DNA of 64,000 nt from Asterias rubens (GCF_902459465.1 NC_047071.1:9114001-9178000); one strand, 5' to 3'; positions 8,034-57,985 are shown, counted from the first letter of the stretch. Notes: generated by a model from the letters alone, not told the origin. Numbers and translations are program-made.

Positions 8034-9623
8034 ATGAGAATGCTGCTAACTTTACTCCCCCTTTTGGGTAAGTTTTGTATATTTATTGACTGACTTTGCC
8101 TTTTTCAGTGTATTGTTTTAGAACACTTTTGAACAAAGTTTTACTTCCTAAGAGTTTAATTGTGTTCCGATTTAAAAATTGCTGGCTTGTTTTCCCCAAT
8201 GCTACGTACAGTTCAGAAAGAAACACACATTGTTTGTTCAATGAAAGATAAGTCGTAAATACTTCCTTAAAAACTTCTCTTTGAGTTTTATACCACGATT
8301 TGTATTCAGTATGGTTAAATTTATCGGGTGTTCATGTTATGTGCGGCCGTTCACGACTTCTAGACGCAACTTTCATCGACCAACTCTCTAAACATTCGCG
8401 TTTCGAGACAGTCATTGTTTAGTTCTTAATCAGAAAAGTTTAACTTCTTCTGAAAGTTGAACTTCCTCCGAGAAACTTTTAAGAACCTTTGAAACGTTCC
8501 CTTCTCAAGCTTGTCATCAATCCTCCTTGTCATTACAAAGATCAACGATTTTAAAATAGAAACAATGGGAGTTTTCCTTCTTAAAGGGGATTTGAACTAA
8601 TCAGCAGTTACTTCCGGTCAGGATATTGAGCTTAAGAGCCATTTCTCGTTTTTGTTTCTCGAGTCAATTGTAAGTCATCCTATATTGTCTCTGCATTAGC
8701 AAATTGAAGAAGAATGGGGGGCCTGTTAATAAAATCATGTTGTGTGGGTTATTTTTTCCAGCAAAATGTGAATGATTTTGTTTCGTCTTATGCATTGATT
8801 TCGTTTATAAAAAACATCGGCAGGGGTTGTCTTGGCACGTATTGGCCTTTATTTGTGTTTGTAAAAAACTTTCTCTTTTTATCATAATCGATTACACACA
8901 AATGTTTAACAGTTATTAATAAAACCAAAATGCTATTTCCCTTTTCTTGATGCAGGGCTGGTCGCAGCTCAAATGCAACGCCAAGGGCATGACAACACTA
9001 GAGGTGGCTTCTTCAATGACATGGGGAAGTCAACCAGCACTTTACCACCGTGGGCCCATCCTGCATCAGGGGTCAGTGGAGGAGCTGCACAGCAAGCTGT
9101 ACCAGTCGGTGGCCAATTGGGTGGATCTCAGTCGAGCACCAAGCCTCCCCATGGCGTCGCCCCGATCGGTAACCCCCAACTACCACCCGTTGCAGGAGCC
9201 AATGCCGACCCGGGTAAATCAGGTGGTTCATCGGGTGGCCTGACCGGCTTCGGAGCCCACGACTATTACAATGGCGGAACCGGCCCCGATGTTCTAGCCC
9301 CACAAGCCGCGGCTCCCTCTGGGGGCAGAAACACGAATCAAAACTCAGGTGAGCAAACGAATGGCTTTTTCGGTGTCGATGGTGGCGGCGGTGGTTATGA
9401 TATGGGACCTGGACTCATTGCCGGTCATGGTCACGGAGGGTACGAGTCAAAAGACATGCAAGATAAATCCAACGCCGATGAAGTGGGGAACGCTGGTGCC
9501 GCTGCAGGAACTGTAGTCGGTGTTGTCGTCGCTGTCATCATCGTGATTGGTATCTTTGCACTGGTCGCTGTCTTCCTCGTTCGGCAAAGGCGCCAGTCTA
9601 GAGTGGTCATCGGCTCCGTGTAA
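8034..9623 (+). CDS. Cluster gene 1: two-exon single-pass membrane protein, Gly/Pro-rich ectodomain, 233 aa; join(8034..8067,8956..9623)
   Basis: Exon 1 is tcaagATG...TTG G|gtaagt (MRMLLTLLPLL-G, phase 1). Acceptor cttttcttgatgcag|gg at 8956 continues in frame with the 8973 ORF; joined CDS is 702 nt. Signal peptide MRMLLTLLPLLGLVAA|Q, TM VVGVVVAVIIVIGIFALVAVFLV, tail RQRRQSRVVIGSV*. Confidence 0.88.
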
Positions 9624-11548
9624 AACCAATGAACAATTATCTGAACTTTAATTTTTTTGTCTTTAATCTGTTTTGCTTTTTTTTCTAACTCTGAAAAAAA
9701 ATTATCTTCCGTGATATCCCCATGACGTGTGCAATAGGAGTTGTTAATATTTTATGCAGATGTCTCTTCGGTAATGTTCCACTACATTATTGTCTTTCTC
9801 TCTGTTATTTTGAAAGCACAGGCTTCAGTCAGCTCTGAACTTAAAGAGCTTCCGTACAAATCAAAGAGGAAACACCATGTCTTGACAATTTGTTTTTCGC
9901 ATCAATATTGTTTAAGTCTCCCAACGAATTATCTGCATGGCAATTTCGACTAGACTCATACAATCGATTTCTCTACATACAATAATTCAACATTTATTAT
10001 GCACAAATGGTGCTGAACAGCAAAACTCCAATATTGCAGTCATGTGTATACACTAACTTGAACATACTACACAAAGTAAAACTTTATGGCGCTCCTCTTC
10101 CCTTGTTCATTACCATAGTCTTCTGGGTATCACACCTTGTGGAATACGTCAGGGGATTGTACAGTGCCTGTTTTGGAGAGTGTTGACGGTCTCAACATTT
10201 CTCATTTCTCATTTCTCGTTTCTTCCAAAATTTGAGTCAATGATCTTCTAGCCCTTCTTTCCAGCCTTAGGAAGTTTCATGTTTCTTTTTAAAAGTAATT
10301 AGTATTTTAATCAAGCAATTTGAAAACCCGTTGGCTAGTCCAAAGGTATCGACCATGTGTGGTTGATTATTATAACTACAACAGCCTACCATAATACACT
10401 CTGCTAGTTCAGTTTTATTTTGTTTAGTTCTAAATCAGCAATGTGTGTATCTATCCAAATTATGCCTCATGAAAGAGCAGTCGGGTGCGAAATTTGTTAG
10501 ACGTGGCACCCTTACGGTGTGGACTGTAAATACATATTTTTGTTTGATGACACGAAGAAAAGATAAAAAAGACGGAGCGCTTAATTGAGATTGGAAGTAG
10601 GTTTTGTACTAACATCTGTGTTGATTGAATAAAAATGTGAACTTAGTATTCTTAGTATTGTGTAACCGGTTCTTCTTGCATCCCTTTCATTAGAAGGGCG
10701 CCGCCAACGACCCACCGTCACCACGCCCCACTGCCACCATCGCCACCCTTTCGAAATGTTTGTGTTTGTTTTATATTGTTGATTGATTGTTTTTTGTTTG
10801 TCAGTGCCTTAACCAGATTTGCATTTGTTTTGCATTGTTTTTGTTCATGTTGTTTTATTTTTGTCAATTGATATTCATCTCTTAGCGAATCAACATATAT
10901 ATATATTTTTTATTTTTTGTATTTTTGTTGTTGTATGAGTTGACCCTTAAATTAATTTCTCCTTTACCTACTGCTGGGTTTCGGTAGTCAAGTCCCGAAA
11001 TTTCATTATGCTGCTTAAGCAAAAATGTTTTTTATAATAATAATTGCGTAGCATTGAAAACGGTACATCAGTCATTAAATCTTTTTCTGGAAAGCCAATT
11101 AATTTGTGGCGCTTCTTCAAACTCGACCCATAACACCCTGTAGGTGGACAGAACCAAAATCTTTGTTTGTTGTGTTTTTTTTTCACTCTTTTTGTTTTTT
11201 TGCCCGTTCATCCGAAATAATCCTGGGCACAGCCAAACAAACAGATTGTTGTAAAGGGAGGATATACATTTGGTAATAACTCAAAAACAAATGGCATTAC
11301 AAACTTTGTCAGAAGCTTTCAGTACAGCGTTTTAAATTTGGGAAATTTCACTATAAAATAACGTTGCTCAGATTGTGTATTCCTATTGCAGATTAGTCTT
11401 TTTTTCTGCGTGGACATTATTCGCCATGGAAATTCGACGATATCTCAACACGCGACCACCTTTTGAAATTTACATGTTCAGTGTCGTTGCATAATGTACT
11501 TAATACTAAACCGATTTAAAAAAAAAAAAAAAATGGTATACGTTGCCT

Positions 11549-11880
11549 TTGAAGGCACTGGTCACGTTTGGTAATTGTCATAAACTATTGTTCACACTTG
11601 GTGGATCCCAACACATAAAATGTCACATAACTAGGTTTTAATCGGTCGTCGAAGTTGCAAGAGAATGATAAAACGCCATTGATTCACAAAATGCTTTCAG
11701 ATGTCTAAAACAAGACTACTGGCCGTAAGTCTGTTACAAACATTTGAGCTCCTCTCAAAAACTAGTTTACTTCAGAGGGAGCCGTTTAAAACTACCAACA
11801 GCTCCCAATGTTAACAAGCAACTTTCATATTAACAATTATTTTGAGTAATTACCATGCAATACTGCCCAGTGTCTGTAAA
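11549..11880. mobile_element. MITE family A, diverged copy
   Basis: aaggcactggtcacgtttggtaattgtc ... gagtaattacca...ccagtgtct with shared internal motifs. Confidence 0.7.
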
Positions 11881-11937
11881 GGGTTTCTTTAAGCCCGAGC
11901 CTCCGCCAAGATATGTTTGATTTTCTGTAAAACGGCA

Positions 11938-12320
11938 TTTAGGAACACGTTGCCTTGAATTGGACGAGTTGGCCCATGAAAAGCAGTTGAAACCTTTTTT
12001 TTAAAGAAATTTATATGGTTAGAAATATTTTATAGAATATAATAATCCACACAAACATGCCTCGAAAGTGCGTGGCTTTCATTATACTTTTCGAACTAAC
12101 ACAGTCGGCCATTTTATGGAGTCAAAAACTTGACTCCACAAAATGGCGTGCCGTGTTAGTTCACGGCGTATAGGGAAAACCCTACCATTTCGAGACATTG
12201 GCTGGTGTGGATCATTATAATCTACTTTTAAAACATCTTTCAAATCATGTGCATTTGATAACAGACGGTTTAAAAACGCATGGATGAACTCGACCGATCT
12301 AAGGCAACGTGTTCCTTTAA
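11938..12320. mobile_element. TTAA-flanked MITE family C (aggaacacgttgccttg TIR)
   Basis: aggaacacgttgccttg ... aaggcaacgtgttcct-ttaa with a central ggagtcaa/ttgactcc palindrome. Confidence 0.8.
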
Positions 12321-12524
12321 TGTCCATAGTTATTAACTACCCCCTCTACTCTCACCACACATCCACCCCTTTTCATAGGTATAAACACCTCCTTGTAAAT
12401 ATCCGACCTGAGAGCAATTTTGAATGATCCAAGATGTCAAATTTACGTAACATCTACACTGCAAAAATCTCTTGGTACCATTAGTGACAACACCGACACA
12501 GAGTTAATTTCACCAACGATTCAG

Positions 12525-12730
12525 TAGGAAGGTGTAGCTGCACGTTACGCGAGCAATGTGAAGGAGAGCGTCAACAAATTGTGTTGTTTCTGGGTGACGT
12601 CACCACTTTGAGCACGTACGTACCTGACGTGAAAAAAATGGTAACCTCACGTGCGCTAAAAACGTGAGATTTCAACGACACCATTTTCTGACGTTAACGT
12701 ACACGCGGAACGCGCAGCTAAACCTCCCTA
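12525..12730. mobile_element. MITE of about 200 bp with TA-flanked TIRs
   Basis: taggaaggtgtagctgcacgtt versus the reverse complement of aacgcgcagctaaacctcccta (22 nt, 3 mismatches). Confidence 0.6.
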
Positions 12731-13572
12731 GTAATGGGGATAAGTAACACTATGTTGGTGTTGTAACAGATAGATACCAGGAAGAATCAATTAAATTCTC
12801 CTGTTGGTGCAGGGTACCAATGCCCGTGGGTGTCCAGTAAAAATAAATTATTAGTTAACGCCTAGTGAGGGCGCTGCTCCATAAGAACAAATATGGCCTG
12901 TCCAAGCTGGAATGACTCATAGGTATATCCTGCAGCCAAATCAACCAATCTTCAACCAGGCCTCAGCTGATTACGCTCTTGGCATAGTCAAATAATGAAA
13001 GGTTGTTTGCCCCCACCCCCTAAACAAAACACGGCCCTAATAAATGTTCTGTTGTTGCGTATGCTGAATAGCAGCGGACCCCAACCCAGTAAGTTAACAT
13101 AAATGGAAACTAAAAATGGTTCGGGTACCGGCTTCAACACCCCCCCCCCCTATCCTCCACCCCCAACATAAAAAAGGGTGGGGTAATATGCCATTTCCTC
13201 AGTGTGAAGTTAACAAGTAGATGAAAGTATGACTAATCACCGCGGACACATACATTGGAGTTTCAGATAATGTCTATCATTTTGTTATGTTATCATGTTC
13301 TCTGAAAAGATACGATAAATGCAATATCACAGTGAGGTTGTAACATTACAATTTCTAAAATTGATTGCTGTTGCAAATTTTGGACTTAACTAAACATAAA
13401 TAAAAGTGATTACCTGATGTCATGGCCATGCAAAGTTGACTGTTGGAGACTTTTACTAAAGTGTAATGATTATGATTTAATTTTGCAATAATTATGTATA
13501 TAGCGCAGCCCCGTCACCACCAATGCCACACAAACTCAAAATGGCAACTCCTGTCAACTTGTTTCATTTCAG

Positions 13573-34709: not shown

Positions 34710-37700
34710 ATGGCGGCGATTTGGTTGCTGAAGTTGTTCCTTGTCTGCAGTCTGGCGTCTGGTAAGAGACATGATACATTTTTGTTGCCTTTTTTTAATG
34801 TTGATTGTGATTTTTTTGTAGAAATTTGTGAAAGGTATTAATTGAGTGGGCGACTTTAGGTTGATGCATAATGAAAATGGGACACCTGTTACTGGCAGGG
34901 TTGTTCTTACTCCCCGGATAGGTATGTTGTTGGGAAACAATGCACAAGTTTTTTCTTTATGAGGGAACTTTAAGCCATTGGACCCTTTCGGTACAGAAAA
35001 AAACAAAAAAAGTTCACAGATTTACAAATCATTTACAGGGTTTACAGAAGGTAATGGTGAAAGACTTCTCTTGAAATATTAGTCCATGTAATGCTTTACT
35101 TTTTGAGAAAACGGTAAAACAATATAAATTCTCGTTAGCGAGAATTACGGATTTCTTTTAAACACATGTCATGACACGGCGGAACGCGCGGAAACAAACG
35201 TGGGTTTTCCCGTTATTTTCTCCCGACTCCGATGACCGATTGAGCCTAAATTTTCACAGGTTTGTTGTTTTATATATAAGTTTCTACTTTTCTACTTTTC
35301 AAGCGTCGTCGTATTTTTTTCCCAGTATTTTTGTAGATATTTTAATTTGATTTTTGAGGTTGAACAAAGAGTTGACTATAGTGGGATTCGAACCAATGCT
35401 CTACCAACTGAGCTATCTAGCCCTATATTGGCAGTGTCCCTATTTTGTCAATATCTTTGTTCGGGGGTGCCCGTGTTTTAACTTGCAAACAATAGTTAAT
35501 GGCCTCACGTTTCGACCCTAGCAGAGTCTTTCTCGAAGGCTAAATGATATTTTAACTTGTGATAACTTCATGACTGTGATCTTGACCTTCTAAGTTGATT
35601 GTGTACTGGACATTTTTTTTTTTTCAAAATAGTGTTATCAAATTCAAGGTAACTATACTTTGCTAACTATACATAAACTTATGTGTCGCGAGTGGATGGT
35701 CGTACAGGTTACTTTGATGCTATGTTGTATTAATGTTGGCGATAGTTTTTATTTTGTCTCTTGGGGTAGATGTGGGTGATTTTTTTTTTTTAGAAGTCTT
35801 GAAAAGGGGAGTTTTATTGGTGAAAGTCACTTCACAATACTTTTTTTTAGTTCGTGTTTATTTATTTATTTTGTTTTATTCATTTAATTACAGTCCCAAC
35901 AGCAGGCTCAAATGACAACCTCGGGCCACCCACCCCTTCACCAGGAAGAACTCACAGCTTTAGTGTGCCGGTCGGAAGTATAATAAACACAGAGAAAGGC
36001 TTTCTACCAAGAGGTCCTACTATAACATTTCCTAATGGTAACGCTGGTGGCGCTCAACCGACCACACCATTCATTTTGCCGACTGTGAGGTCAAGTGTCA
36101 CAAACGGACCGCTGGTAGATACAGAACCAGTCGGACGTGCTGGTGTAACACAAAAAGGCGGGAACGCGGGGACAAATGGCGCAACTGACACTGGAATGTC
36201 AAAAGGTGGCGCTATAATCCCAGCAGGGAACCCAAATACCCCAAACGTTGGAGTAGCTCCGGACTCAGGGGTTACAGGGACGGGGACAACGAACACACAA
36301 CCAGGTGGTGGAACAGCAGCCGGAGTTCCGGATCCCGGGGTTAACGGAAACCCTGGCACAGGTACCTCTACTAATAATCCGGGTGTTAATTATCCGAGTG
36401 GTGGAACAACAAATGGAGCGTCTGGTACAAGCTTGAACGGACACCCTAAATCAGGAACGTCAAACACAAATCCAAGTGGTGGATCAGCAGCCGGAGTTCC
36501 GGATCCTGGGGTTAACGGAAGCCCTGGTTCGGGGACCTCTAGCAATAATCCGGGTGTAAATAATCTGAGTGGTGGAACAACGAATGGAGCTTCGGGTACA
36601 GGCGTGAACGGAAATCCTAAATCAGGAACGTCAATCACAAATCCAAGTGGTGGAACAGCAGCTGGAGTTCCAGATCCTGGGGTTAACGGAAACCCTGGTG
36701 CCGGGACCCCTAGCAAAAATCCGGGTGTAAATAATCCGAGTGGTGGAACAACGAATGGAACTTCGGGTACAGGCGTGAACGGAAATACGACAAACACAAA
36801 TCCAAGTGGTGGAACAGCAGCTGGAGTTCCAGATCCTGGGGTTAACGGAAACCCTGGCGGGGGAACCTCTAGCAATAGTCCGGGTGTAAATAATCCGAGT
36901 GGTGGAACAACGAATGGAACGTCGGGTACAGGCGTGAACGGAAATACGACAAACACAAATCCAAGTGGTGGAACAGCAGCTGGAGTTCCAGATCCTGGGG
37001 TTAACGTAAACCCTGGCGGGGGAACCTCTAGCAATAATCCGGGTGTAAATAATCCGAGTGGTGGAACAACGAATGGAACGTCGGGTACAGGCGTGAACGG
37101 AAATACGACAAACACAAATCCAAGTGGTGGAACAGCAGCTGGAGTTCCAGATCCTGGGGTTAACGGAAACCCTGGTGCAGGGACCCCTAGCAATAATCCG
37201 GGTGTAAATAATCCGAGTGGTGGAACAACAAATGGAGCGTCTGGTACAGGCTTGAACGGAAACCCTAAATCAGGAACGTCAAACACAAATCCAAGTGGTG
37301 GATCAGCAGCCGGAGTTCCGGATCCTGGGGTTAACGGAAGCCCTGGTTCGGGGACCTCTAGCAATAATCCGGGTGTAAATAATCTGAGTGGTGGAACAAC
37401 GAATGGAGCTTCGGGTACAGGCGTGAACGGAAATCCTAAATCAGGAACGTCAATCACAAATCCAAGTGGTGGAACAGCAGCTGGAGTTCCAGATCCTGGG
37501 GTTAACGGAAACCCTGGTGCCGGGACCCCTAGCAAAAATCCGGGTGTAAATAATCCGAGGGGTGGAACAACGAATGGAACTTCGGGTACAGGCGTGAACG
37601 GAAATACGACAAACACAAATCCAAGTGGTGGAACAGCAGCTGGAGTTCCAGATCCTGGGGTTAACGGAAACCCTGGCGGGGGAACCTCTAGCAATAGTCC

Positions 37701-39768
37701 GGGTGTAAATAATCCGAGTGGTGGAACAACGAATGGAACGTCGGGTACAGGCGTGAACGGAAATACGACAAACACAAATCCAAGTGGTGGAACAGCAGCT
37801 GGAGTTCCAGATCCTGGGGTTAACGGAAACCCTGGCGGGGGAACCTCTAGCAATAATCCGGGTGTAAATAATCCGAGTGGTGGAAAAACGAATGGAACGT
37901 CGGGTACAGGCGTGAACGGAAATACGACAAACACAAATCCAAGTGGTGGAACAGCAGCTGGAGTTCCAGATCCTTGGGTTAACGGAAACCCTGGTGCGGG
38001 GACCCCTAGCAATAATCCGGGTGTAAATAATCCGAGTGGTGGAACAATGAATGGAACTTCGGGTACAGGCGTGAACGGAAATACGACAAACACAAATCCA
38101 AGTGGCGGTACAGCAGCTGGAGTTCCGGATCCTGGAGTTAACGGAAACCCTGGCGGAGGCACATCTAGCACTAATCCGGGTGTAAATAATCCGAGTGGCG
38201 GAACAACGAATGGAACGTCGGGTACAGGCGTGAACGGAAATACGACAAACACAAATCCAAGCGCGACTGATCCTAGTGGTGGGGGAACGGCTAACGGGGT
38301 TCCGACTGGTGGGGCAGGAGGCAGCGTTCCGGGATCTGGAAATCCTGGTTCTGGATCACCAAACGTTCCGGGAACCCCAGTGAATGGGCCAGCAGCAGGA
38401 ACCCCAGGAGTGAACACTAGTAATGGAAATCCGAACTCCGGGCTTCCGGGTAGCCCGACCAATGGAGGTAATGGCGGAAGTGCTGTCACTCTATCACCAA
38501 TTGTGACTAAAATGAATAAACCTCTACTACCCACACCTGTAATGTTCGAAATACAACCCTTTGCTCCTCAACAAGGAGACGAAAATAGCAAGAGTTCAGA
38601 AGAGTCAGAAACGAACAAAAGGAAAAAGGGTTGGACCGGAACTGTTACCTCAGACGAGTCTGGGGGAACGGGAACCTCAACTGGGACCGGGGGAACTGGT
38701 GGGACTGTGGGAACTGGAACTTCGAGTGGGACTGGAGGAGCTGGAACCTCAAGCGGGACCGGTGGAATAGGTGGGACTGGGGGAACTGGAACTTCGAGTG
38801 GGACCGGGGGCACTGGAACATCAAGCGGGACCGGGGGAACCGGTTACCCAGGAGGCACCGGGGGTTTTGGGGGAACTGGGGGAACGGGAGCTACTGGTAC
38901 GGGTAGTGGAGGGCAAGGTCGTACTGGAGGTTCGGGAGTTGGCACCGGAGCTGCCGGAGGAGCAGCTGGTAGGGGGACGGGAGGGACGGGAGGGACGGGA
39001 GGGGTGGGTGGCACGGGAGGCACAGGTGGAACTATGGCAGGAGAAGGTTCAGTTGGGCCTTTCGGGCCCGGTGTGGATTTTGGGTCGGAGGGATCAGTTG
39101 GCGGAGAAGGCACCTATGGCAATGGAGGAACTGATGGGAGAGGCGGTTACGGTGGAACTGGAACCGGAACTGGTACTGATACCGGCAGGGGTACAGGCAC
39201 TGGTACCGGCTCCGGTACAGGAACTGGTACTGGAACTGGAACCGGAACATCAGGCTCTACCGGGTCAGGGACTGGGACTGCTAGCTCTGGTGGAAGGCCA
39301 GGCTTCGGTATTCCAGCTGGACGGGGAACCGCTGTCGGAATACCAACTCCTAGCCCGAGAGATCGGTTGACACGTCTTCCAGTTGACGGGAACGGTAGGA
39401 TTCCGTCGGGACGCGGACAGAGCCCGAACCTGCCCGGGCAAAACCAGCCAGGTATCGGCGGGGGGACGGGGCAAGGAGGTGTCAAGCACGGTACAAGTGG
39501 TGTTTACGACGAAACACATCCCAGTGTTACGGTAGGGGGTATCGTCAACCACGTCAATGGACAGAATGACACATCGGGAAGGATTACCGGCGGGGCGATC
39601 GGTGGCGTAGTCGGGGGCCTCGCACTGATAGCCGGAGCGGCTGTTGGAGTTTACTTCATCAAAAAGAAACGTACCAATGTGCCACTGATCAACAAAGCAG
39701 GAACGTATGAAACAATCGAGATGAGCACACAAAGAGATTCGGTTCCACTGGAAACAGCCGAAGGGTAG
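34710..39768 (+). CDS. Cluster gene 4: large repetitive Gly/Asn/Thr/Pro-rich type I membrane glycoprotein, 1308 aa; join(34710..34761,35894..39768)
   Basis: Exon 1 is ccaagATG...TCT G|gtaaga (MAAIWLLKLFLVCSLAS). Acceptor catttaattacag|tc at 35894, phase 1, in frame with the 1304-aa ORF; joined CDS is 3927 nt. Twelve 53/57-aa repeats, a Gly-Thr region, TM GAIGGVVGGLALIAGAAVGVYFI, then KKKR and a short tail. Confidence 0.87.
34968..35280. mobile_element. MITE fragment in gene 4 intron 1
   Basis: Starts ttaagccattggaccctttcggt and contains ccgatgaccgattgagcctaaattttcacaggtttg, related to the family A interior. Confidence 0.55.
35356..35470 (-). mobile_element. tRNA-derived SINE fragment (related copies at about 45757-45900 minus and 20464-20527 plus)
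   Basis: Reverse complement reads ctagatagctcagttggtagagc...ggttcgaatccc; shared flank ttgaacaaaga. Confidence 0.65.
36290..38265 (+). repeat. Coding tandem repeat in gene 4: 12 units of 159 or 171 bp with an 819-bp higher-order duplication
   Basis: GVPDP occurs 12 times. Measured spacings: 159 bp (36782/36941/37100) and 171 bp (36451/36622). Variant markers recur at exactly +819 (aatctgagt 36562/37381; agcaaaaat 36712/37531). Confidence 0.95.
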
Positions 39769-43273: not shown

Positions 43274-43309
<36 letters not shown>

Positions 43310-48122: not shown

Positions 48123-50612
48123 AGTGACTCTCCATCACATCCCAAGCTGATTTGAGTTCAACCCCATATGGTAAACAGATTATTAAGAATAGGTACTTAT
48201 GAGTTTTATATATTTTCAGATTTTGGTTCGGCTCTGCAGAGAACAGCTAAATTGTTTACTGTTCCAATTCGTCTACAAAAGGTCATACACAAGACCTGGA
48301 AATACCTATTAGATGTTTCATTGTTATTTCCGTCCAGTTTATTAACAAGGTCATTATTGCGGGAAGCCGGGGGGGGGGGGGGCACCCCAAACTTAGGTTT
48401 ACATCCTAACCGCCCTCTGTTGAAGACTGGTTTTTGACAATTACCAATAGTGTCCAGTGTCTTCAAGCAAGGTGTGATGTCTATGGTGATAATGACTTAT
48501 TTTAAGATGAATTTTTTTTTTTAATCGATCGTTGACGATTTTGATTTGTAAACTACAACTTGATAAAGAACGGGTTATACAAGAAATCTGTCCCTCGTTT
48601 TTGTCAATCCAAATAAATTTGCAAAACATAAAATGGTGACCATGAAAACAAAAACTTGCTTTCTTAAAAGCTAGGCCAACATCACAATTAGGTTCATCCT
48701 TTTGCCGGACTGTTGACAATGGAAGTGGCTTGAAAGATCCACTATATTAATAATTGCAACATCCCGCTTTTTGAAACTTAATGGCCCCATTCACACGGCT
48801 AATTTCCTCTCGAACCTTTGGATGGCCTACATTAAAGTGTTTGGTGCGGGTAGACCCTTGGAAGGAACACTCTGGATGTCTAGTATCCCAGACCGGAAAC
48901 CAAAGTAGATATTAAGATAAACGTGAGAAATATAATTTCAGGTTTGCTTAGTGGGAGATTTAAAGGGAAGGTACACGTTTTGTAATTACTAAAACAAATA
49001 CTAACTTAAAAACTGACTTCGTAACGAGCATTGGAGAGCTGCTGATAGTATTGTGAGAAACGGTTCGCTCTGAAGTAGCATAGATTTTGAAATAGAGGTA
49101 ATTTCTCACTAAAATAATGAACGACTTCTAGCTAGTCTAACAATGGTGTTTTTTCTTTCATCATTTTCTCCCAACTCCGATGACCAATTGAGCTCAAATT
49201 TCCACAGGTTTGCTATTTTATGCATATGTTGAGATACACCAAGTGCAAACACTGGTCTTTGACAATTACCAATAGTGTACATTCCCTTTAAACCCAGATG
49301 ATAGAAACTCGTTTGCCATGTACGTTGTTTTTATTAGGGTTCATACCAGACGCAATATTAGATGATTATTCACTGTATAATCGATGGTGTTGTTAATACT
49401 GGACTCACAAGCACTTACTCTCTGTACAAAACGCCCGTGTTACAAATAACCGAGATTCCAGGAACCTTGAGGCTTGACCCGATCTGAGTTATTATCGACC
49501 TATAGATTGTTTGACCCATAAATGGATCTAACTATACGCAGAATCCGAGTTAAAATTGCATTTCTTTTAAACTTGTTTTCGTGGTCAACCTGACACAGAA
49601 ATGGTTTAGGGCGAGTGCAATGCGTTTAAAACGGGGTTTGTACACATTTACTCCATGGTTTATTCTCAAATATAGATACACAACAAACACAATTCAAAAA
49701 TTAGTACATTTGTGTAGTTCAACACCATGGTGTCAATGTTGCAGTGTACCGAACTCAAACAAACACCCATTTTCATTATGTCCTTTGTTTTCATTGACAG
49801 TGTTGCTGCAATGCTTCCAGGCCGCCCCTTTAGCTGAAGGCTCTGGGAGTCAAGTTCCCCAGCTGGTATCAGGCGGAGTTGCTCTCAGTCCAAGATGGTC
49901 TGAAATCGTCATAGACCAGGAAGGAAGTGGTGGCGAGTCCGAAGCGTCACAGTTCTCATCGACTTCGGATATTCTCTCGCAGTCGAGTAGTCTTGAACCG
50001 TCAAGCGAAGTTCTGAGCAGCTCCGACACCGCCGAGGCTTACGGCACATCCAGTGAAGGCGATTCCGATTTTGTGATCGAAGAATCCGGTGTCGATAACG
50101 AGGAGTCGATACTGATTCAGACGACGACGATTTGGCAGGAGTTAGACGATAACGATTTTGACCTGGACGGTGGGGCTGGGAATGAAGTCGGTCAGGAAGG
50201 AGGGGAGGAGCCTGGCACTGACCAGGAGGAGGGGGATAATGTCGACAATGAAATCATGAATGTCACACCAACAGAAGCCGAGACGACAACGTCTGTTGAC
50301 GACAACGCCATCCCCGGTGGTGTACGCAACAGCCCGATTGAGTCTGGCGAACAGGAGAGTAACAACTTGAACATCATCTCGAATGTACTTGGGAACGAGG
50401 TTGGGGATCACGAAGGCCGAGTCAAGGGGGGCGTCGGGACGCCTAACGAGCCGAATGAGACCAGTGAAAGCAGCGGCATACCAGGCTCGGGTGTCATGGC
50501 GGTGGTTATGTTTGCTGCAGCGATCGGAGTTGGTGCATTGATTAGTTTCATCATGTTTAGCGTGTCTAGATTCTTTAAGAAAACTACCTCCCGTAACAAC
50601 GACCCCAAATAA
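45410..50612 (+). CDS. Cluster gene 5: acidic Ser/Glu/Asp-rich single-pass membrane protein (proteoglycan-like), 286 aa; join(45410..45458,49801..50612)
   Basis: Exon 1 is gacATG...ATG G|gtaagt (MSSRGQTSLLVTVILM). Acceptor tttgttttcattgacag|tg at 49801, phase 1, gives V-LLQCFQA|APLAEGSGS and completes a signal peptide; joined CDS is 861 nt. TM VMAVVMFAAAIGVGALISFIMFSV, tail SRFFKK. The pairing spans a 4.3-kb intron, so it is somewhat less certain. Confidence 0.8.
46000..46751. mobile_element. Two family A MITEs in opposite orientation sharing a central TTAA (46385-46388), inside gene 5 intron
   Basis: Copy 1 (46000-46388) ends gtccagtgtctttaa; copy 2 (46385-46751) starts with the reverse-complement end and finishes cagtgtccactgtgtttaa. 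Confidence 0.8.
48960..49291. mobile_element. MITE family A variant, inside gene 5 intron
   Basis: ttaa-agggaaggtacacg ... gtgtacattccct-ttaa. Confidence 0.8.
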
Positions 50613-53600
50613 ATCAGAAAAACTCTGCGGACATTTAGTTAGAGTACTAGACCAGACGTTTAATTGGTTGTCTTTCTACGAACATAAAAACATGCAGTCA
50701 AGTGTATTCATTCGGATACATTTCACACAATTGTTGTACATTTTTTACCTTTAAAAATATACTAATTTCCAAGTGAGGAAGGATGTTTTCATCATTAGAC
50801 TTTGCTTTAAAATTATGAAGGTTCTTGTAAAAAAGAGGGCACATCAACGAACATTTAAAAAAACATGCTCTCTTGTAAAAAAGGTAATTATTTACGTTTG
50901 TCAATTGCCATTGATGAAGGTTGATAGAGCTAAACCAGAAGAATTTTGCCCGTAACAAGATTGATTTGTATTACATGGTAACTGAAGCCAACAAATATGT
51001 ACATTGCCTTTGGATTGTGCGCTTTCTTGTCTATTAGAATGTTCAGAAAGAATGTTTGTCAAAAAATTACTGTTTTAAAGTAGAATGTAATTATATTCTA
51101 CAAAATGGTCCCTTAAATCCATTGTGTTGTTCTTTTGAATTGAACACATAGAACACAGCCAGGTATATGTAAAACTAAAATATCGCTTTCTCAAAATAGC
51201 GGACTAGATCGTGAAACAGTTTATTACCTTCGGTCCGTTTATTTAAATTTTTCAATGTCATGTTATTGTAATTTAAAAGACTGGTTGACTAAGGTCATTG
51301 GCTTAGGTCATTTCATTGCACTGAACTTTAACCTGTGATCTCTGGAGATGGGGCAAGTTATTACATAAGACACTAGCACGCGTATGCGGCCTCTGTTGAC
51401 CGGTCCTTATTAATTATGTAGCGCCAATTTCACCCAATTGTGACCGGTACCATGCTACACCAGTCTATACCAACGTGTAAATGTTGGGCAAATATTGGGT
51501 GAAGGTAACTGAAGATTTTTAGGGGATGGAAACGTCTCGCAGGACAAAGGTTTAAAACAATATTCCGGAAAACATATATCCACTGAGCTTTGCAGCACAA
51601 CATATTGGTATTCGTAGGAATGTTTAAAGAACATGTCATCAAGGCAATTTACAGACAGGGTGAACATCAATCCACATGATAATGTCAATATATTTGGTTG
51701 AATGTACAGTAGGGTAGTAAGACAAACAAAAATGCATGCTGAATTATAAGTGCTTCTTTTCGCTTGCGTGACATGGCCTTTATGATTCAAACCCTGATTG
51801 GACCATGCTCCTATGTTGATGCATTGGACAGCAATGAATAAAACAAAAACAAAATACACAAATGATCGTTAATATCAATGTATAGAATAGTTGTATTGTC
51901 ATTCATAATTGCTTGACAATGTGTATATAAAATTGCCTGGTATTTTTCATTTTAAGAAAAGTAACGTGCAGGTTTTAAAAACTCAAATAAAAAAACTTAA
52001 CAAACGTTAAAGCGATGTTTGTTTTATTCTGTTTGTCTGTTTTAAATCATTTTGGAACTCCTTTAGCAGTAAAGCAAACGAAGAAGTGTTAAAAAAAAAC
52101 AGAAAGACAGCAATTGCTATTGAATGTTTTTAGTTTTTCGAAAAACCTTATTTTTTACTCGATAATTACGAAAAGTTCAGAAGTGTACACATATCAAAAT
52201 TACATTAAAATGGTGAACAAGTGCATTATAAACAAGTAAAAATACAATTTCTGTTGAAAACATTCCGCTCAGGTAGCTGTTTAATAGAATGTCACTGGAT
52301 GGGAGAACAAATTTAAATTCAATAGTTATAAGAATGGAACCTCCATTGAAGTCGCAAACTTTGCTTAAAGGGACATTACATAGTTGTTTTTGCCAACAAA
52401 TCGGTGGCTGGCAGTGTAGGCACTTTATGTAATACACCACATACATCAACTGACAAACCTCTTGAAGTTTGAGATCGATTGGCCATCTGGGTCACGAGAA
52501 AATATTGAAAACCCGGTTACACAATTGCAGGACATTGTTGCAAAAACTAATACGAATAAAACGCTCAGGGAGCGATACATTTGACAATTCAGACACATTC
52601 GGTACTTAATTTGTAATATAAACGACTTTCAACGCTTACTGTCGTGGAGTATGAACCATTTGTATACAATTTAAACATGAAATGGGTGTGTTTAACTACT
52701 TTTTTAATTTGTTTTTTTATTTTTTATAATTACGTGTCTCTCTGTCAAGTAACGAAGTACAAGAGGAAAACTGAGTGAATGTTAATAAAAGCGGGTTTGC
52801 AGCCATACACATTTGCCTATAGCGGAAATTGAACCTGCGACCTCCGAATCACCTAACACGAATTGAACCATCAATCCTTTTTTGGCAGTCTCCTTATTGT
52901 GTCTTTAGTTTAGGAGTCACACACAAGTGTACGATATAACCTTGTCTCCATTCCTTAAAGTATGGCGGTGAATCTATTGTGAGATGCTCATTTACTTGTT
53001 TTGCATAACAACAACTAAAGTTGCATAAGTCTTATACTTTTTCAGTAACAATACAGTTCAAACCCGTGGCTGATAAATTGAATTGTTAACTTGCGGAAAC
53101 TGACTCATTGCCTTCGTCACTAATTAGGTCTTCCTATTTTGGACTTGGTTGCAATGGTGGGTTTGGGGATAACACATCAGAGACATACACATACATGTGC
53201 ATGGTCGGCTTTACGTATAAGAAATGTTTGTTGCTCATCATGTTTTATAAATAGGAGCTCTGACGTACAGGAAAGTATACAAGCAGATTTTTATCTCGTC
53301 ATTCTCCCTGTGTGCGATGACTAGTGCGTTACTAAATGGTTTCAGAATAGTTTACCATTTAACCTCGCGTTGGTTTCAATTACTTCAATGAGAGACCTAT
53401 AAATTTTGTGAAAAATGAAAAGATTCATTACAATTTTTTTTTTTTCCGCTTGACGCTATATGGTAAAGTTAGTATACATCATTATCTTGGAAATTACTTA
53501 TAAGACTTAAGTGGGTAGATGGGTATACGTTTAATTAAACCTAACGATATGGCCTCCCTTAATAATACCAATATGGTTCAATACGCATGTTTTGATTTTT

Positions 53601-56046
53601 AAAACGGCTATTTAGCTAATCCCAAGCACTAATATCAACCGAATAAGGGGTGGGGGTGGGGACCATAGACGTCTGAAAGCCAGTTACTCGAGCTAATTTC
53701 TTCTTCTGGGAGATACAATTTGTAAAATTCCATTGTGACCGAAGAGCGAGCCAACTCTCCATTTTTGCGCACGATTTATGAAAACCATTTACATTCCTTG
53801 ATTGTCATTTTCGTTTTTACTTTATGAAATAGCTTTAGTCCGGTTGGAAGTGGTGGATGGGGGGGGGGGGGGGGGGGGCGGTCACGCACTCCATTGATAC
53901 TTTTGTCTAACTTACTATTTGAAGGTGTCCAGTTAATTTTGAGGTTTCCAATGTTGAATAAATTGGTACATGGCGTCATTTGGCGGCCATCTTGTTGGCG
54001 GCCATCTTGGATTTTGACAAACAAATTATAGTCAGCGTAAGTTTTGAGCCAGACACCACACAAAAACAATTTAATCCATTCAGTTAGAAAACAAACCCAT
54101 GGGGCGCATAGGAATCCACACTCTTTTCCACCTCACTACTTTAAGAAACTCTTCACGAGACTGTACCTTACATAATCTAACCTCTTGACCTCGAGTCACC
54201 GGAAGTCGGGTCAGACAGTGAGTAATGACCGGAACTTTACATAACCTCATTATTTAACACGAGGTCTACCACCTGGCTCTCTCTATGTTTGTTTCTAAAC
54301 CTAAACATTGCAAATTGTAACCATTTTAGGTAAAAGAAAGCAAATTTTAAAGGAAAATCATCATAGAAAATCAGAAATGAGACATTAATGTTGCTCAAGA
54401 CTAAAGTAAGCTGCCCCTCCATTTAAAGGTTAAAGCCAAACTGAATGAACAGTTTCCGTTCAGTAATTCAATCAAAAACTGTTTGAAAGTGAGCGCCACA
54501 TTAATAATGTGTTTGTGTTTGTAAGTAATTTCGACAGGAAGAAAATAACCGTGTATCCAGGAAATCACAACTTAATTTGAGAATTCTGTTTCCAATAAAG
54601 GCTCGATTTTGTTAGCTTCTATAAAATGATTACATAAAGGTTAAAGTTTATACTACGTCTAAACTATTACAATCTGGTTAAAATGATAATTGTATGTGGG
54701 GAATTACTGTTTGATGTTTGTCTGTTTTTTTTTGTTTTTTTTCGTTTTTTTTTTCTTGTTTTCTTTTTTTTTCTTGGGGGGGGGGGGTTGTTTAAGTACA
54801 CGTAACTTTGAAGACAAAAGACTCAGTAGCATTTATAAAAGAACGTTATGCTGTCAAAATAAAATCTCACTGACTGCGAAGGTCATGCTGGCACAAATCC
54901 TCCCCAGTAGTGTTCCCTCTCTGAAATGAAATAAAACCCCAAACAATGGCAGATGGCGTAATTAAAAATAAATCATTTGGGGAAGTTGTAGACAAAATTG
55001 CATAATGAGTGGAGGAGGGGGCTTTACAGCTTTTGTGAGTGTACTGCACTTTGAGGAGCTTCTCTGTTGAAAGGTTATTGGGAAATATTTATGTTGTTAT
55101 CCCCCCCCCCCAAAAAAAAAAAAAAAAAAAAAAAAACGTTACCGACAGTTAAGTTTCTCAGATCGTGTATTCTAGTTGCAGATTAGTTTTCTGCTTGGAC
55201 GTCACAACTCCCAATTTTTCGCTATAATCTCACAAACGCGAACACCTTTTCAACTAAATTGTCCACTGCTAGTTTTATGGTATCATACTTACAGCTAAGT
55301 TGTATTTAAACAAACAGTAGGGTTCCACTTACCAAGCGATCACTCTATAACCTTAACATATTATTTGATAGGTCTGTAAAATTAAGCGTGTTGTCGTCCC
55401 TTTGAGGCAACATTTGTTTTGAAGGTTTCCTCTAGGCACTTGCTGATTTCTTGACTGAAACCTTTTAGTCCACCACCCATTGTCCTTAATTGACCCATCC
55501 TATACTCTGTCAACGACATCTTTGTTAATAATAACTTTAACCGCAAGAAGCAATTGTGTTGCCAAGATATATTTTTATCTCACGCCACAGTCTGTGTTTA
55601 ATGAAACCATACAGCCAACCAAAATGCTCGGCGTAATTACAAACCAAAATTAAAAACATCAAGGGAGTTAATTTTTCTAATGGAGTCTCTTCCGGTTCGA
55701 ACCGGAAGTTCAAACATCATTTCGATGTCAAGATGTCACCGTAACGTACAACACAACGTAAGCTTGCCTTTTATATTTTACAGTAAGCATAAGCACCAGT
55801 TTCTTTTAATAATGTACGTGGTATGAATGACCCCAACTACAGTTTGTGGTAAACAGGGTCTGTCAACTTCTCACGTGAAGGGGGCCTGGAACACGTTGTG
55901 GTGAGTCAGCTAGTATCGTGATTCTATACATCCTTAGGCATGCAACAGTCTAAGCCGGTGTGAGACACCCACGTTTCTCGGTCCTTTTTTCTCTGTCACT
56001 CAGCCGGCTTCAGGACGTCTCAAGATTAGCTACAACTGCTTCCAAG

Positions 56047-57985
56047 ATGAAGACATTGTCTGTACTTATCGTTGTTCTTATCGGTAAGTTAGTTATATTT
56101 CAACTTTTAATTAATTTATTATGTTACGGTTTAGGATTATGGGTTGGTGGAAACATCGGCCGTTTGGTAATGGGTATACTTAGACAATTATTTTAAAATG
56201 GCAGCCATCTTGGAAATGCAAGATTTCGCATACTACTTGAGCAGACCATCCAATTGCATTGTTAGCTGTTATAAAAACAAAAGTTTCTTTTGAAAACACC
56301 TTTTGATCATAGGGCTGTTAGTGTGTTTATTTGTTAGTATCAGTTTTCTGTAGTTTGAAAACATGATCTTAACTTGGCCTTAACTTCATTTTGTAGAGTT
56401 ACTTGAATGTTATTCTTTCTGTTGTTTTTTTTCTTTTTTTTTTTCTTTTTTCGTTTTTTGTTTAAGTCATTCGCACCTCAATTCTGTAATCGGTGGAGCA
56501 CAGAAGTAAAACGTCTGTTGTTGTTTATCAACACCGGCGCCATAATGTCGTCATATTTTACATATATAAATCACATGACCATGAGTCACTTGATAATGAG
56601 TCACATGACAGCTGACATTGACACTCTTAATTGTTTAGTTTCAATATTGAAGGAGCAAGGTATGCTTTTAAATTTTAAACAAACAAGCAAATAAACAAAC
56701 AAACAAACAAACAAACAAACAAACAAACAAACAAACACAAGTTGTGACTACTTTAAAATAGGTGCATCGGCGTTTGTTTTATGGTTTATGGTGTACTCAC
56801 ACACAAACGAGTGTTTGCGCACTGAAAAAAATTCACTTTAACCTCTTAAGAAAAATATCACTGTATTTTATAATTTTGTGTTACTCCCCAGGCACAGCAT
56901 TTGCCCAGAATGACGAGAGCAACGAACAGGTTGATGCAGCTGCTCAGATGGGTACCGACAACGCGGCCGGTGGGATGGCAGGTGAGGTCGATCGGCAGGG
57001 GATGGGGGTATTCTTCGGAAACATCGGCGGGAAGGTCGTCCCCAAACCACAGATGACCGGTCAGGGAGAAGGCGACGTGGAGAGCACTGAGGCCGGAGGT
57101 GCCGCCATGGAAGCTGCTGCTGTCGCAGAGCAGAATGGGGAGGAGGAGGAGACAGAGGAGAAGACTAACGAGCAAAACGAACCAGAAGAAGAATCGGAGG
57201 CAGCTGAGGCTGGGGAGGAGAATGAAGAGATGGAAGGAGAGGAGGCTGATGGTGAGGAATCAACGGGAGGTATGCCGGTTATGGACGGCGAGGAGAACGA
57301 GGAGACCCCGGCGGGAGGCACTAATCCCTTCATCGCTATCAATGGAGGACAACCTGAGGGTGAGGGTATGGACGCTCCAGAGATGGTTGGTGGTGACGGG
57401 GAGGGAGCTGAGATGGGCGAAGCTGGCGATGAGAGCTCTGAAGTTTCCGAAGGAGCTGCACAGACAGCCGGAGTTACCACGGATAGCGAGGAGGAGCAGG
57501 GAGCCGCCATCGGTCAACAGAGTGAGGCTGATGTTGAGAGCTCAGAGGTTGCCGAGGAAAGTGAACATGAATCCTCAAGCGTGATGACCACCAGCGGAGG
57601 GGTCCCTGTCGAAGAGGTACCCGTGGAGAAAGAGGCATCAGTTGACAATGAGGCACCAATGGATGAAAATAAACCAGTGGATATAGAGGAACCGGTGGAT
57701 AACAAGGCAACAGAGGATACCGAGTCAACTGACCTCAAGTTGAACAAACTTGCTGAAAAGGCAAAGCAGCTTTCTGACGGGGTCACGACTGAGCAGCCTG
57801 GTGCCACCACGCCCCCACCCACAGAGGATAAAGATGATAAAACCTCACAGGGGCTGAGTGACGCCACCAAGACCCGTATTGCAATATCGGTGTCGTCCAT
57901 CGGAGCCGTGGCACTGGTAGGTGTTATCGCTATGGCTATTGGAAAGCATACACAACGACGACCTAACTCTGGACCACCAGCATAG
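56047..57985 (+). CDS. Cluster gene 6: Glu-rich acidic single-pass membrane protein, 376 aa; join(56047..56083,56892..57985)
   Basis: Exon 1 is ccaagATG...ATC G|gtaagt (MKTLSVLIVVLI). Acceptor tgttactccccag|gc at 56892, phase 1, gives GTAFA|QNDES; joined CDS is 1131 nt. TM IAISVSSIGAVALVGVIAMAIG, tail KHTQRRPNSGPPA*. Confidence 0.88.
56680..56737. repeat. (CAAA)n microsatellite in gene 6 intron
   Basis: Visible tetranucleotide run. Confidence 0.9.

What the first reader, a model, noticed from the sequence alone, without database searches (positions are those of the whole stretch)
8034..57985. Hypothesis: a P16-like skeletogenic (biomineralisation) gene array
Established: sea urchin P16 is a small acidic Gly/Ser/Asp-rich protein with a signal peptide, C-terminal TM and short basic tail, needed for larval skeletal growth, and has related P16rel genes. 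Secreted S-x-E motifs are FAM20C kinase targets. Seen: the same topology in six genes; S-x-E/D-rich tracts in genes 4-7 (KSSEESE, SSEGDSD, DSEEE, ESSEVAEESE, DSDDDESSE); TM ends such as AGAAVGVYFIKKKR and VAAAVGAIAFFVVRKRK that resemble my memory of the P16 TM end. Inference: an expanded equivalent in another echinoderm lineage for ossicle or spine mineralisation. Alternatives are tube-foot adhesive, cuticle, or gamete-coat proteins.
Basis: inference. Interest (0 to 1): 0.72.

Follow-up and report, generated by a model that had tools for sequence, protein, structure and literature searches.

The report
Starfish array of P16-like membrane-protein genes
This stretch of the common starfish genome holds part of a long row of genes for small, floppy, membrane-anchored surface proteins built like the sea-urchin skeleton protein P16, but neither real kinship to P16 nor a role in the skeleton is shown yet.

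Summary
The window is Asterias rubens, contig C11:9114001-9178000.

**Confirmed.** It holds same-strand two-exon genes. [quoted passage not shown] A phase-1 intron follows, then one large exon for a low-complexity ectodomain, a C-terminal transmembrane helix and a short basic tail.

- "Gene 2" is an alternative 3' exon of gene 1, shown by RNA contigs and by NCBI models in three starfish. The window therefore holds five such membrane-protein genes plus secreted gene 7.
- S-x-E/D motifs in genes 4-6 are no more frequent than their composition predicts.
- The row runs beyond the window, to at least 10 genes over about 107 kb.
- The N gap lies in intergenic repeats.

**P16 link: suggestive, not proven.**
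- Genes 1-3 form a family found in other starfish and in crinoids.
- The crinoid member is 173 aa, acidic, with the same gene structure.
- A MAM-domain gene is the neighbour in Asterias, Patiria and a crinoid.
- The published Lytechinus P16 C-terminus (...MLSNA) resembles the tails here (...LINSA).
- The 373-aa gene 1-2 isoform matches sea-urchin Hypp_2998, the neighbour of P16, in size, charge and layout.

**Against it.** No sea-urchin protein was retrieved. Genes 4-6 match no family profile. The tissue of expression is unknown.

The parts
8034..8067 (+). g1 exon 1: start codon and the first 11 codons plus 1 base of the signal peptide; phase-1 donor TGG|GTAAGT
   Evidence: A 1797-nt RNA contig from run X2 joins 8066|8955. 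NCBI model P0003 begins with the same peptide.
8956..9623 (+). g1 exon 2: rest of the signal peptide, Gly/Pro/Asn-rich ectodomain, TM helix, a tail of about 13 residues (RQRRQSRVVIGSV) and the stop. Together with exon 1 it encodes a 233-aa protein. The 3'UTR runs to about 10639.
   Evidence: contigs in X2 and X10 run unspliced from 8955 to 10529-10639.
9348..9348 (+). Internal alternative donor (CAG|GTGAGC) inside g1 exon 2
   Evidence: Joint 9344->13569 (GT..AG, cut +4) in run X1. It reproduces P0003 exactly.
13573..14267 (+). 'Gene 2': an alternative 3' terminal exon of g1. It encodes a Gly/Met/His-rich segment, its own TM helix and the tail RKRKHSRLINSA. The resulting g1-2 isoform is 373 aa, pI 10.0, 25% Gly.
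   Evidence: Patiria P0009 has the same layout.
19656..19689 (+). g3 exon 1 (signal peptide start, phase-1 donor GGG|GTAAGT)
   Evidence: It matches P0006 (LOC117295260).
20790..21415 (+). g3 exon 2: ectodomain, TM helix and a tail ending SRLIIGSA (219-aa protein). It is 58% identical to g1.
   Evidence: It is the only A. rubens match of crinoid P0010.
24735..24958 (.). Assembly gap in intergenic repeat DNA between g3 and g4; not part of any gene model
34710..34761 (+). g4 candidate exon 1 (17 codons plus 1 base, phase-1 donor CTG|GTAAGA). Inferred, with no RNA check. A second ATG exon at 34871 runs into TAG just before its donor.
35894..39768 (+). g4 large exon: about 1290 aa of Gly/Thr/Asn/Ser/Pro-rich ectodomain, including a 159-bp x 11 coding repeat at 36457-38261, then a TM helix and a 35-residue tail that starts KKKRTNVPLINKAG
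   Evidence: No Pfam family. Not matched by the g1-3 profile.
48822..48849 (+). g5 tentative exon 1 (9 codons plus 1 base, weak donor CGG|GTAGAC)
   Evidence: It is phase-compatible only and has no RNA support.
49801..50612 (+). g5 large exon: acidic Ser/Glu-rich ectodomain (model pI 4.05), TM helix, tail RFFKKTTSRNNDPK
   Evidence: No family match.
56047..56083 (+). g6 exon 1 (MKTLSVLIVVLI plus 1 base, phase-1 donor TCG|GTAAGT)
56892..57985 (+). g6 large exon: Glu-rich (17.6% E) acidic ectodomain, TM helix, tail KHTQRRPNSGPPA (376-aa model, pI 4.05)
   Evidence: No family match.
61244..61292 (+). g7 exon 1 (signal peptide start, phase-1 donor TGA|GTAAGT)
62617..63053 (+). g7 exon 2: a secreted product with no TM helix. 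It has an Asp/Ser-rich acidic block, then a Thr-rich mucin-like block, and ends ...RGDGTA.

Best explanation
The window covers the first half of a tandem, same-strand array in Asterias rubens. The array holds at least 10 genes, at about C11:9.122-9.229 Mb.

Each gene has a tiny first exon with the start of a signal peptide, a phase-1 intron, and one large exon. The large exon encodes an intrinsically disordered, low-complexity ectodomain, a single C-terminal transmembrane helix and a short basic cytoplasmic tail.

I read it as the starfish counterpart of the sea-urchin P16 / P16rel / Hypp_2998 locus. On that reading the proteins are type I membrane proteins on the surface of skeleton-forming cells. 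Their Gly-rich or acidic ectodomains face the calcite deposition space, and some are shed into the matrix.

Shown here: the gene structures; the paralogy of g1-g3; alternative splicing of g1 to two different TM-bearing ends; transcription; and conservation of the family and of its MAM-gene neighbour in other starfish and a crinoid.

Inferred: homology to echinoid P16/Hypp_2998, and the skeletogenic role.
For: - **Species and gene models.** A. rubens proteins P0003 and P0006 match at 100%.
- **Family.** g1, g2 and g3 align with each other. They are the only matches of their profile in the genome at E <= 0.01.
- **Wider distribution.** A full HMMER search of 1.84 billion representatives found only 8 proteins. 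These are starfish proteins, two unplaced Logan transcripts, and the crinoid Anneissia P0010 at E 2e-5.
- **The crinoid member.** P0010 is 173 aa and pI 4.1, with a signal peptide, a neutral Gly/Asn-rich part, an Asp/Ser-rich part, a TM helix and an RQRRQNSS tail. Its only match in the A. rubens genome is g3, at E 4e-5 over residues 24-171. It has the same two-exon structure, with a phase-1 intron and donor TGG|GTAAGT.
- **P16 layout from the literature.** Lytechinus P16 is 161 aa: signal 1-17, Gly-rich 33-74, Asp/Ser-rich 75-108, TM 126-148, tail of 13 residues (PMC2758014).
- **Tail similarity.** The published reverse primer for Lytechinus P16 translates to a C-terminus of ...AQMLSNA*. Compare ...SRLINSA* (g2) and ...SRLIIGSA* (g3), whose tails are about 13 to 16 residues.
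- **The sea-urchin locus is itself an array.** Sp-P16 (Glean 18408) lies immediately next to Hypp_2998/2999. That protein is 372 aa, pI 11, 30% Gly, with a signal peptide and a TM helix at 337-357. It is PMC-restricted and among the most abundant matrix proteins (PMC2909932 and PMC2614417). Other skeletogenic genes (SPU_018403, SPU_018405) have adjacent gene numbers.
- **Match to Hypp_2998.** The g1-2 isoform is 373 aa, pI 10.0, 25% Gly, with its TM helix at 342-360.
- **Synteny.** A MAM/EGF/ShK membrane-protein gene lies upstream of g1 in A. rubens and in Patiria. A MAM gene adjoins the crinoid gene.
- **Extent of the array.** g8, g10, g11 and g12 lie beyond the window with the same structure. 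g10 has the P16 domain order: Gly-rich, then Asp/Ser-rich, then TM, then a 16-residue tail.
- **Transcription.** Exon-limited contigs and spliced joints appear in 4 runs. Runs X1 and X10 also hold about 40% of the words of the g5-g6 stretch.
Against: - No echinoid protein reached E <= 0.001 with the g1-3 profile in the full search. Word-seeded searches with g1, the crinoid protein and a 10-sequence profile also found none.
- Short conserved motifs of the family are absent from the published Hypp_2998 peptides.
- g4, g5, g6 and g8 are not detectably related to g1-3. g11 and g12 match only weakly, at about 21 bits with high composition bias.
- g1 and g3 are near-neutral rather than strongly acidic like P16.
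- qPCR primers for the reported starfish P16 homologue (App16, Koga 2016) do not match the Patiria locus or this region.
- The topology is common. Language-model neighbours are podoplanin, glycophorin, syndecan and TMEM154-type proteins.
- The tissue of the RNA runs is hidden, so expression in skeleton-forming cells is untested.
Confidence: 0.5

Rival explanations
1. This is a lineage-specific cluster of generic mucin-like or glycocalyx type I membrane proteins of the podoplanin, glycophorin or CD99 kind. They would be expressed on epithelia, coelomocytes or tube feet. They would have no evolutionary link to P16 and no role in mineralisation, and the resemblance to P16 would be convergent low-complexity architecture.
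For: - Only sub-threshold Pfam hits were found: CD99L2, Podoplanin and FAM174.
- Atlas neighbours are podoplanin, glycophorin, syndecan and TMEM154 clusters, all below 0.9.
- g4 and g7 are Thr/Ser/Asn/Pro-rich like mucins.
- No echinoid hit was found.
- g4-g6 have no detectable homology to g1-3.
- S-x-E motifs are not enriched.
Against: - The crinoid homologue has P16 size, charge and domain order.
- The tail end resembles the Lytechinus P16 C-terminus.
- The sea-urchin P16 locus is likewise an array of Gly-rich disordered TM-protein genes.
- The g1-2 isoform has almost the same length, charge and TM position as Hypp_2998.
Confidence: 0.35
2. These are secreted or shed structural proteins of the tube-foot adhesive, the cuticle or a gamete coat. 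The TM helix would serve only as a temporary anchor before release.
For: - g7 and the downstream (GGSQ)n gene g9 lack a standard TM-plus-tail end.
- g1 reaches very high k-mer depth in one RNA run, as expected of a bulk structural product.
- The ectodomains are repetitive and low in complexity.
Against: - Five genes in the window, and at least four more beyond it, keep a TM helix and a conserved basic tail.
- The tail is conserved from crinoid to starfish, which argues for a membrane-resident function.
- From general knowledge, known A. rubens footprint proteins are large multi-domain proteins. This was not tested here.
Confidence: 0.1

Closest known systems
Sea-urchin P16 (Sp-P16 SPU_018408; Lytechinus P16/UTMP16, GenBank AAY59533)
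   Same: - Signal peptide, disordered Gly-rich ectodomain, a single TM helix near the C-terminus and a cytoplasmic tail of about 13 residues.
- The C-terminal end resembles the tails here (...MLSNA vs ...LINSA / ...LIIGSA).
- It has alternatively spliced isoforms.
- It belongs to a tandem cluster of similar genes.
- A crinoid relative of g1-3 has P16's length (173 vs 172 aa), acidity and domain order.
   Different: - No significant sequence match to any echinoid protein was obtained.
- g1 and g3 are longer (233 and 219 aa) and near-neutral, with only a weak acidic block.
- The Asp/Ser-rich block typical of P16 is clear only in g10 and g11, outside the window, and in the crinoid protein.
Sp-Hypp_2998/2999 (Glean3:18406/18407), the Gly-rich matrix protein encoded next to Sp-P16
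   Same: The g1-2 isoform has almost the same length (373 vs 372 aa). It is basic (pI 10.0 vs 11) and Gly-rich (25% vs 30%). It has a signal peptide, and its TM helix sits in the same place (342-360 vs 337-357). It belongs to an array of P16-like genes.
   Different: No short motif is shared with the published tryptic peptides, which cover 69% of the protein. The sea-urchin protein is Gly/Pro/Tyr-rich (YPG-type peptides), whereas g2 is Gly/Met/His/Asn-rich. Occlusion in the matrix is not shown for the starfish protein.
Vertebrate SCPP gene cluster (secretory calcium-binding phosphoproteins)
   Same: A tandem array of fast-evolving genes for disordered, low-complexity proteins. The signal peptide is split by a phase-1 intron, and some members are acidic and Ser-rich.
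   Different: There is no homology. SCPPs are secreted and have no TM helix. S-x-E motifs are not enriched here beyond composition. This comparison rests on general knowledge, not on a test.
Podoplanin, glycophorin and CD99-type small mucin-like type I membrane proteins
   Same: Same topology and size, with a disordered ectodomain likely to be glycosylated.
   Different: Only sub-threshold Pfam scores were found (15 bits against cut-offs of 30-34).

Membership tests
P16 (echinoid skeletogenic membrane protein) | N-terminal cleavable signal peptide | tested here: met
   Hydrophobic N-termini are encoded by first exons. g1 is confirmed by a spliced RNA contig and g3 by the NCBI model. g4, g5 and g6 are inferred.
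P16 (echinoid skeletogenic membrane protein) | Single TM helix near the C-terminus with a short cytoplasmic tail (13 residues in Lytechinus P16) | tested here: met
   TM windows are followed by tails of about 13-17 residues in g1, g1-2, g3, g5 and g6, and 35 residues in g4. P16 layout is from PMC2758014.
P16 (echinoid skeletogenic membrane protein) | Small (about 160-172 aa), strongly acidic (pI about 3.7), with a Gly-rich neutral region followed by an Asp/Ser-rich block | tested here: inconclusive
   - g1 is 233 aa with pI 7.0, and g3 is 219 aa with pI 6.3. Both have only a weak acidic block.
- g1-2 is basic.
- g5 and g6 are acidic but Glu/Ser-rich and longer.
- Crinoid P0010, and g10 and g11 outside the window, fit this feature.
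P16 (echinoid skeletogenic membrane protein) | Significant sequence similarity to Sp/Lv P16 | tested here: not met
   No echinoid protein appears among the 8 hits of the full profile search or in the three word-seeded searches. The only direct comparison possible was with the 7 C-terminal residues derived from a published primer, which are similar. The full P16 sequence could not be obtained.
P16 (echinoid skeletogenic membrane protein) | Genomic clustering with P16rel and Hypp_2998-type genes | tested here: inconclusive
   An analogous array is present, and one isoform has Hypp_2998-like properties. The echinoid locus could not be fetched to test shared flanking genes. The MAM neighbour is shared among Asterias, Patiria and the crinoid only.
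P16 (echinoid skeletogenic membrane protein) | Expression in skeletogenic cells downstream of Alx1; required for skeletal growth | not testable with these tools
   The RNA runs are coded and carry no tissue label.
Sp-Hypp_2998/2999 | About 372 aa, about 30% Gly, basic, signal peptide, TM helix about 15 residues from the C-terminus | tested here: met
   The g1-2 isoform is 373 aa, 25% Gly, pI 10.0, with its TM helix at 342-360. Reference values are from PMC2909932.
Sp-Hypp_2998/2999 | Sequence similarity to the sea-urchin protein | tested here: not met
   Twelve conserved 4-5-residue motifs of the g1/g2 family are absent from the published peptide list. The peptides read directly show only compositional likeness.
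   Counts equal the composition-shuffle means in g4, g5 and g6. Only g7 exceeds its mean.
Podoplanin / CD99L2 / FAM174 (Pfam) | Score above the Pfam gathering threshold | tested here: not met
   The best scores are 15 bits against cut-offs of 28-34.

The most novel reading that the evidence does not exclude
The P16 / Hypp_2998 locus is an ancient, pan-echinoderm biomineralisation gene nursery, present from crinoids to sea urchins.

It sits beside a MAM/EGF membrane-protein gene. The last exon of that gene is entered by a phase-1 intron and encodes a disordered stalk, a TM helix and a tail that starts VRQRRKSR. That exon could have been the template for the founding member of the array.

The locus would then have grown by tandem duplication and runaway low-complexity divergence, as an echinoderm analogue of the vertebrate SCPP cluster. 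Starfish would have added a gene that switches between two TM-anchored C-terminal modules by alternative splicing.
Probability: 0.25. Interest if true: 0.7.

Novelty: new member of a known kind. Interest (0 to 1): 0.5.

Why it matters
Echinoderm skeleton proteins are thought to turn over fast between classes. The starfish ossicle proteome lacks spicule-matrix and MSP130 proteins, and one large survey table lists no non-echinoid counterpart of P16.

If this array is the starfish and crinoid equivalent of the P16/Hypp_2998 locus, it gives a conserved, locus-level handle on the skeletogenic effector toolkit across all classes. It also supplies a set of marker genes for adult starfish sclerocytes, and an example of how disordered mineral-associated proteins evolve in tandem arrays.

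If the genes are instead generic surface mucins, the finding is an ordinary lineage-specific gene cluster.

Tried and rejected
- **Pfam on all seven products.** Nothing scored above threshold.
- **Rfam.** Only a tRNA was found.
- **Three word-seeded protein searches.** The queries were g1, crinoid P0010 and a 10-sequence profile. They found only starfish or crinoid proteins and no named P16.
- **ESM Atlas look-alikes.** For g3 and the crinoid protein, all scores were below 0.9 and the neighbours were generic mucin-like proteins. A third call failed on a frame error.
- **Attempts to obtain a P16 sequence from papers.**
  - Only Lytechinus P16 residues 31-70, an antibody peptide and two primers are printed.
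  - No supplement examined (Koga 2016, Dylus 2018) holds a P16 sequence.
- **App16 qPCR primers (Koga 2016).** They were searched against the Patiria locus, the window and its flanks. No match was found with up to 5 mismatches, so App16 could not be placed.
- **Motif search of Hypp_2998 peptides.** No match was found.
- **Literature search for the LOC identifiers.** Nothing was found.
- **A separate first exon for g2.** The phase-compatible candidate at 9722-9770 lies in the g1 3'UTR and has no supporting joint in four RNA runs, so it was rejected.
- **The ATG exon at 34871 as the g4 start.** It was rejected because it reads into TAG immediately before its donor.
- **Tissue of expression.** Run and sample names are coded, so this is not obtainable.

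Full report
**Identity of the window**

The products of the ORFs at 8973-9623 and 20792-21415 match NCBI proteins of Asterias rubens at 100% (P0003, P0006). The genome search places the window at G000:C11:9114001-9178000.

**Observation**

All the large + strand ORFs and the quoted strings are present. With first exons added, the models are as follows.

| Gene | Exons | Product |
|---|---|---|
| g1 | 8034-8067 + 8956-9623 | 233 aa |
| g1-2 isoform | 8034-8067 + 8956-9348 + 13573-14267 | 373 aa |
| g3 | 19656-19689 + 20790-21415 | 219 aa |
| g4 | 34710-34761 + 35894-39768 | 1308 aa |
| g5 | 48822-48849 + 49801-50612 | 279 aa; first exon tentative |
| g6 | 56047-56083 + 56892-57985 | 376 aa |
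| g7 | 61244-61292 + 62617-63053 | 161 aa; no TM helix |

- Every gene has a phase-1 intron inside the signal peptide, followed by one large exon.
- Each of g1-g6 ends in a strong hydrophobic window followed by a basic tail.

**The assembly gap**

The gap at 24735-24958 lies in AT-rich repeated DNA, 3.3 kb after the g3 stop and 9.7 kb before g4. No model touches it.

**RNA evidence**

Contigs from four runs were laid on 8030-14029.
- Within the g1-g2 exons, coverage is limited to g1 exon 2 plus a 3'UTR of about 1 kb, and, mainly in X1, the g2 exon.
- A strongly transcribed repeat sits at about 11430-12830.
- A 1797-nt contig (X2) joins 8066|8955 and then runs unspliced to 10639. This is the g1 mRNA with its own TM helix and stop.
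- A contig in X1 joins 9348|13573 (GT..AG). This is the g1-2 isoform.

NCBI models for A. rubens (P0003) and A. amurensis (P0005) use this junction, and Patiria miniata P0009 has the same gene-1 plus gene-2 exon layout. The Patiria g1 exon also keeps its own TM helix and stop. "Gene 2" is therefore an alternative 3' exon, and one gene yields two proteins with different membrane-proximal halves, TM helices and tails. Runs X1 and X10 also hold about 40% of the sampled words of 48800-58300.

**Family relations**

- g1, g2 and g3 are paralogues. They are the only matches of their profile in the genome at E <= 0.01.
- A full HMMER scan of 1.84 billion representatives found only 8 proteins: the A. 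rubens proteins, relatives found in the first search (probably starfish), Patiria LOC119740341, two unplaced Logan transcripts, and Anneissia japonica LOC117120834 (P0010).
- P0010 has a second crinoid relative in Antedon.
- P0010 is 173 aa and pI 4.1. Its order of parts is signal peptide, Gly/Asn-rich part, Asp/Ser-rich part, TM helix, RQRRQNSS tail.
- The only A. rubens match of P0010 is g3, at 31% identity over residues 24-171.
- P0010 has the same two-exon structure, with a phase-1 intron after 15 codons and the same TGG|GTAAGT donor as g1.
- The family profile does not detect g4, g5, g6, g7, g8 or g10. It detects g11 and g12 only weakly.

**Extent of the array and synteny**

In 194 kb around the window, 12 ORFs of at least 100 aa end in a TM helix plus basic tail. 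All are on the + strand.
- One is a transposon ORF.
- One is the last exon of an upstream MAM/EGF/ShK membrane-protein gene. Its MAM hits are at 9060097 and 9071656, and it ends at 9103547.
- The rest are the g1 and g2 exons, g3-g6, g8, g10, g11 and g12.
- Secreted g7 and the (GGSQ)n gene g9 are interspersed.

g10 lies 15 kb beyond the window. It has the P16 domain order: a Gly-rich region (31% Gly overall), an Asp/Ser-rich block, a TM helix and a 16-residue tail ending ...RLNV.

The same MAM/EGF gene precedes the g1 orthologue in Patiria, and a g4-like gene follows it. A MAM gene also adjoins the crinoid gene.

The last exon of the MAM/EGF gene is entered in phase 1. It encodes a disordered stalk, a TM helix and a tail that starts VRQRRKSR. 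The family profile picks it up at about 20 bits.

**Link to P16**

No tool could deliver a P16 sequence, so the test rests on published text.
- Lytechinus P16 is 161 aa: signal 1-17, Gly-rich 33-74, Asp/Ser-rich 75-108, TM 126-148, tail 149-161. It has a shorter splice isoform (PMC2758014).
- Its primers give an N-terminus of MKTIIALFA and a C-terminus of ...AQMLSNA. The C-terminus resembles the tail ends here.
- In S. purpuratus the P16 gene lies immediately next to Hypp_2998/2999. That protein is 372 aa, pI 11, 30% Gly, with a signal peptide and a TM helix at 337-357. It is PMC-restricted and among the most abundant proteins of every skeletal matrix (PMC2909932, PMC2614417).
- Further skeletogenic genes carry adjacent gene numbers.
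- The g1-2 isoform matches Hypp_2998 in length, charge, Gly content and TM position. It shares no short motif with the published peptides.
- A starfish P16 homologue (App16) is reported with BLAST E = 6e-11 to Sp-P16 and is up-regulated by alx1 (PMC4750990). Its primers could not be placed in this locus.
- One survey states in its text that P16 is conserved across echinoderm classes, but its table lists no orthologue outside echinoids (PMC5831733).

**Verdict**

The array and the shared topology are real and non-random.

The P16 interpretation is plausible. I give about even odds that this is the starfish counterpart of the P16/Hypp_2998 locus. That figure rests on architecture, gene structure, a crinoid intermediate, the tail-end similarity and the parallel organisation of the sea-urchin locus.

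It is not demonstrated. No echinoid protein was retrieved, g4-g6 match no family, and expression in skeleton-forming cells is untested. The main rival is a cluster of generic mucin-like surface proteins.

Noticed in passing
window 59389-59462 (+): An intact tRNA-Ser (anticodon AGA) lies between g6 and g7. Rfam scores it at 48 bits and ARAGORN agrees.
   Followed up: partly
window 11430-12830: A repeat in the intron between the g1 3'UTR and the g2 exon reaches very high contig depth in all four RNA runs. The contigs show many internal joints and loose ends. It looks like a highly transcribed, multi-copy element.
   Followed up: no
window 25134-26121: About three copies of a roughly 330-bp tandem repeat lie just after the assembly gap. 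Each unit carries a palindrome, ATGACGTCAT(T/A)GATGACGTCAT, made of two CRE-like TGACGTCA cores.
   Followed up: no
window 6254-6678 (+): An ORF with the motif ...LHWLPVQKRIHFK..., which I recall as typical of a retrotransposon reverse-transcriptase C-terminus. It also appears as the one spurious 'TM + tail' ORF in the array scan.
   Followed up: no
window 35380-35440: A tRNA-like fragment (gggattcgaaccaatgctctaccaactgagctatctagccc) lies inside the g4 intron. It is probably a tRNA-derived SINE remnant.
   Followed up: no
window 43198-43446: An (ACAACG)n microsatellite of about 42 units lies between g4 and g5. It produces long artefactual Thr/Val/Leu ORFs on both strands.
   Followed up: no
G000:C11:9102774-9103547 (L009 8774-9547) and Patiria L008 3539-4237: The last exon of the upstream MAM/EGF/ShK gene is entered by a phase-1 intron. 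It encodes a disordered acidic stalk, a TM helix and a tail that starts VRQRRKSR. This is close to the VRQRRQSR of g1 and scores about 20 bits against the family profile. It is a possible source of the array's founding exon. A MAM-domain membrane protein is also listed in the Patiria and sea-urchin skeletal proteomes (PMC5460417), but whether it is the same gene was not established.
   Followed up: partly
G000:C11:9193168-9193905 (L013 5168-5905), 15 kb beyond the window: g10 is a 223-aa model with 31% Gly and mature pI 4.25. Its order of parts is Gly-rich, then an Asp/Ser-rich block (DGNDDDSDDMDGSGSGDGS), then a TM helix, then a 16-residue tail. It is the member of the array that best fits the published P16 domain order.
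   Followed up: partly
G000:C11:9211815-9212459 and 9228577-9229242: g11 carries a Ser-run/acidic block and the family's NSGEQ motif. g12 is Gly/Tyr/Arg-rich and basic, with a GDPFFD motif. Both match the g1-3 profile weakly, so the family extends about 50 kb beyond the window.
   Followed up: partly
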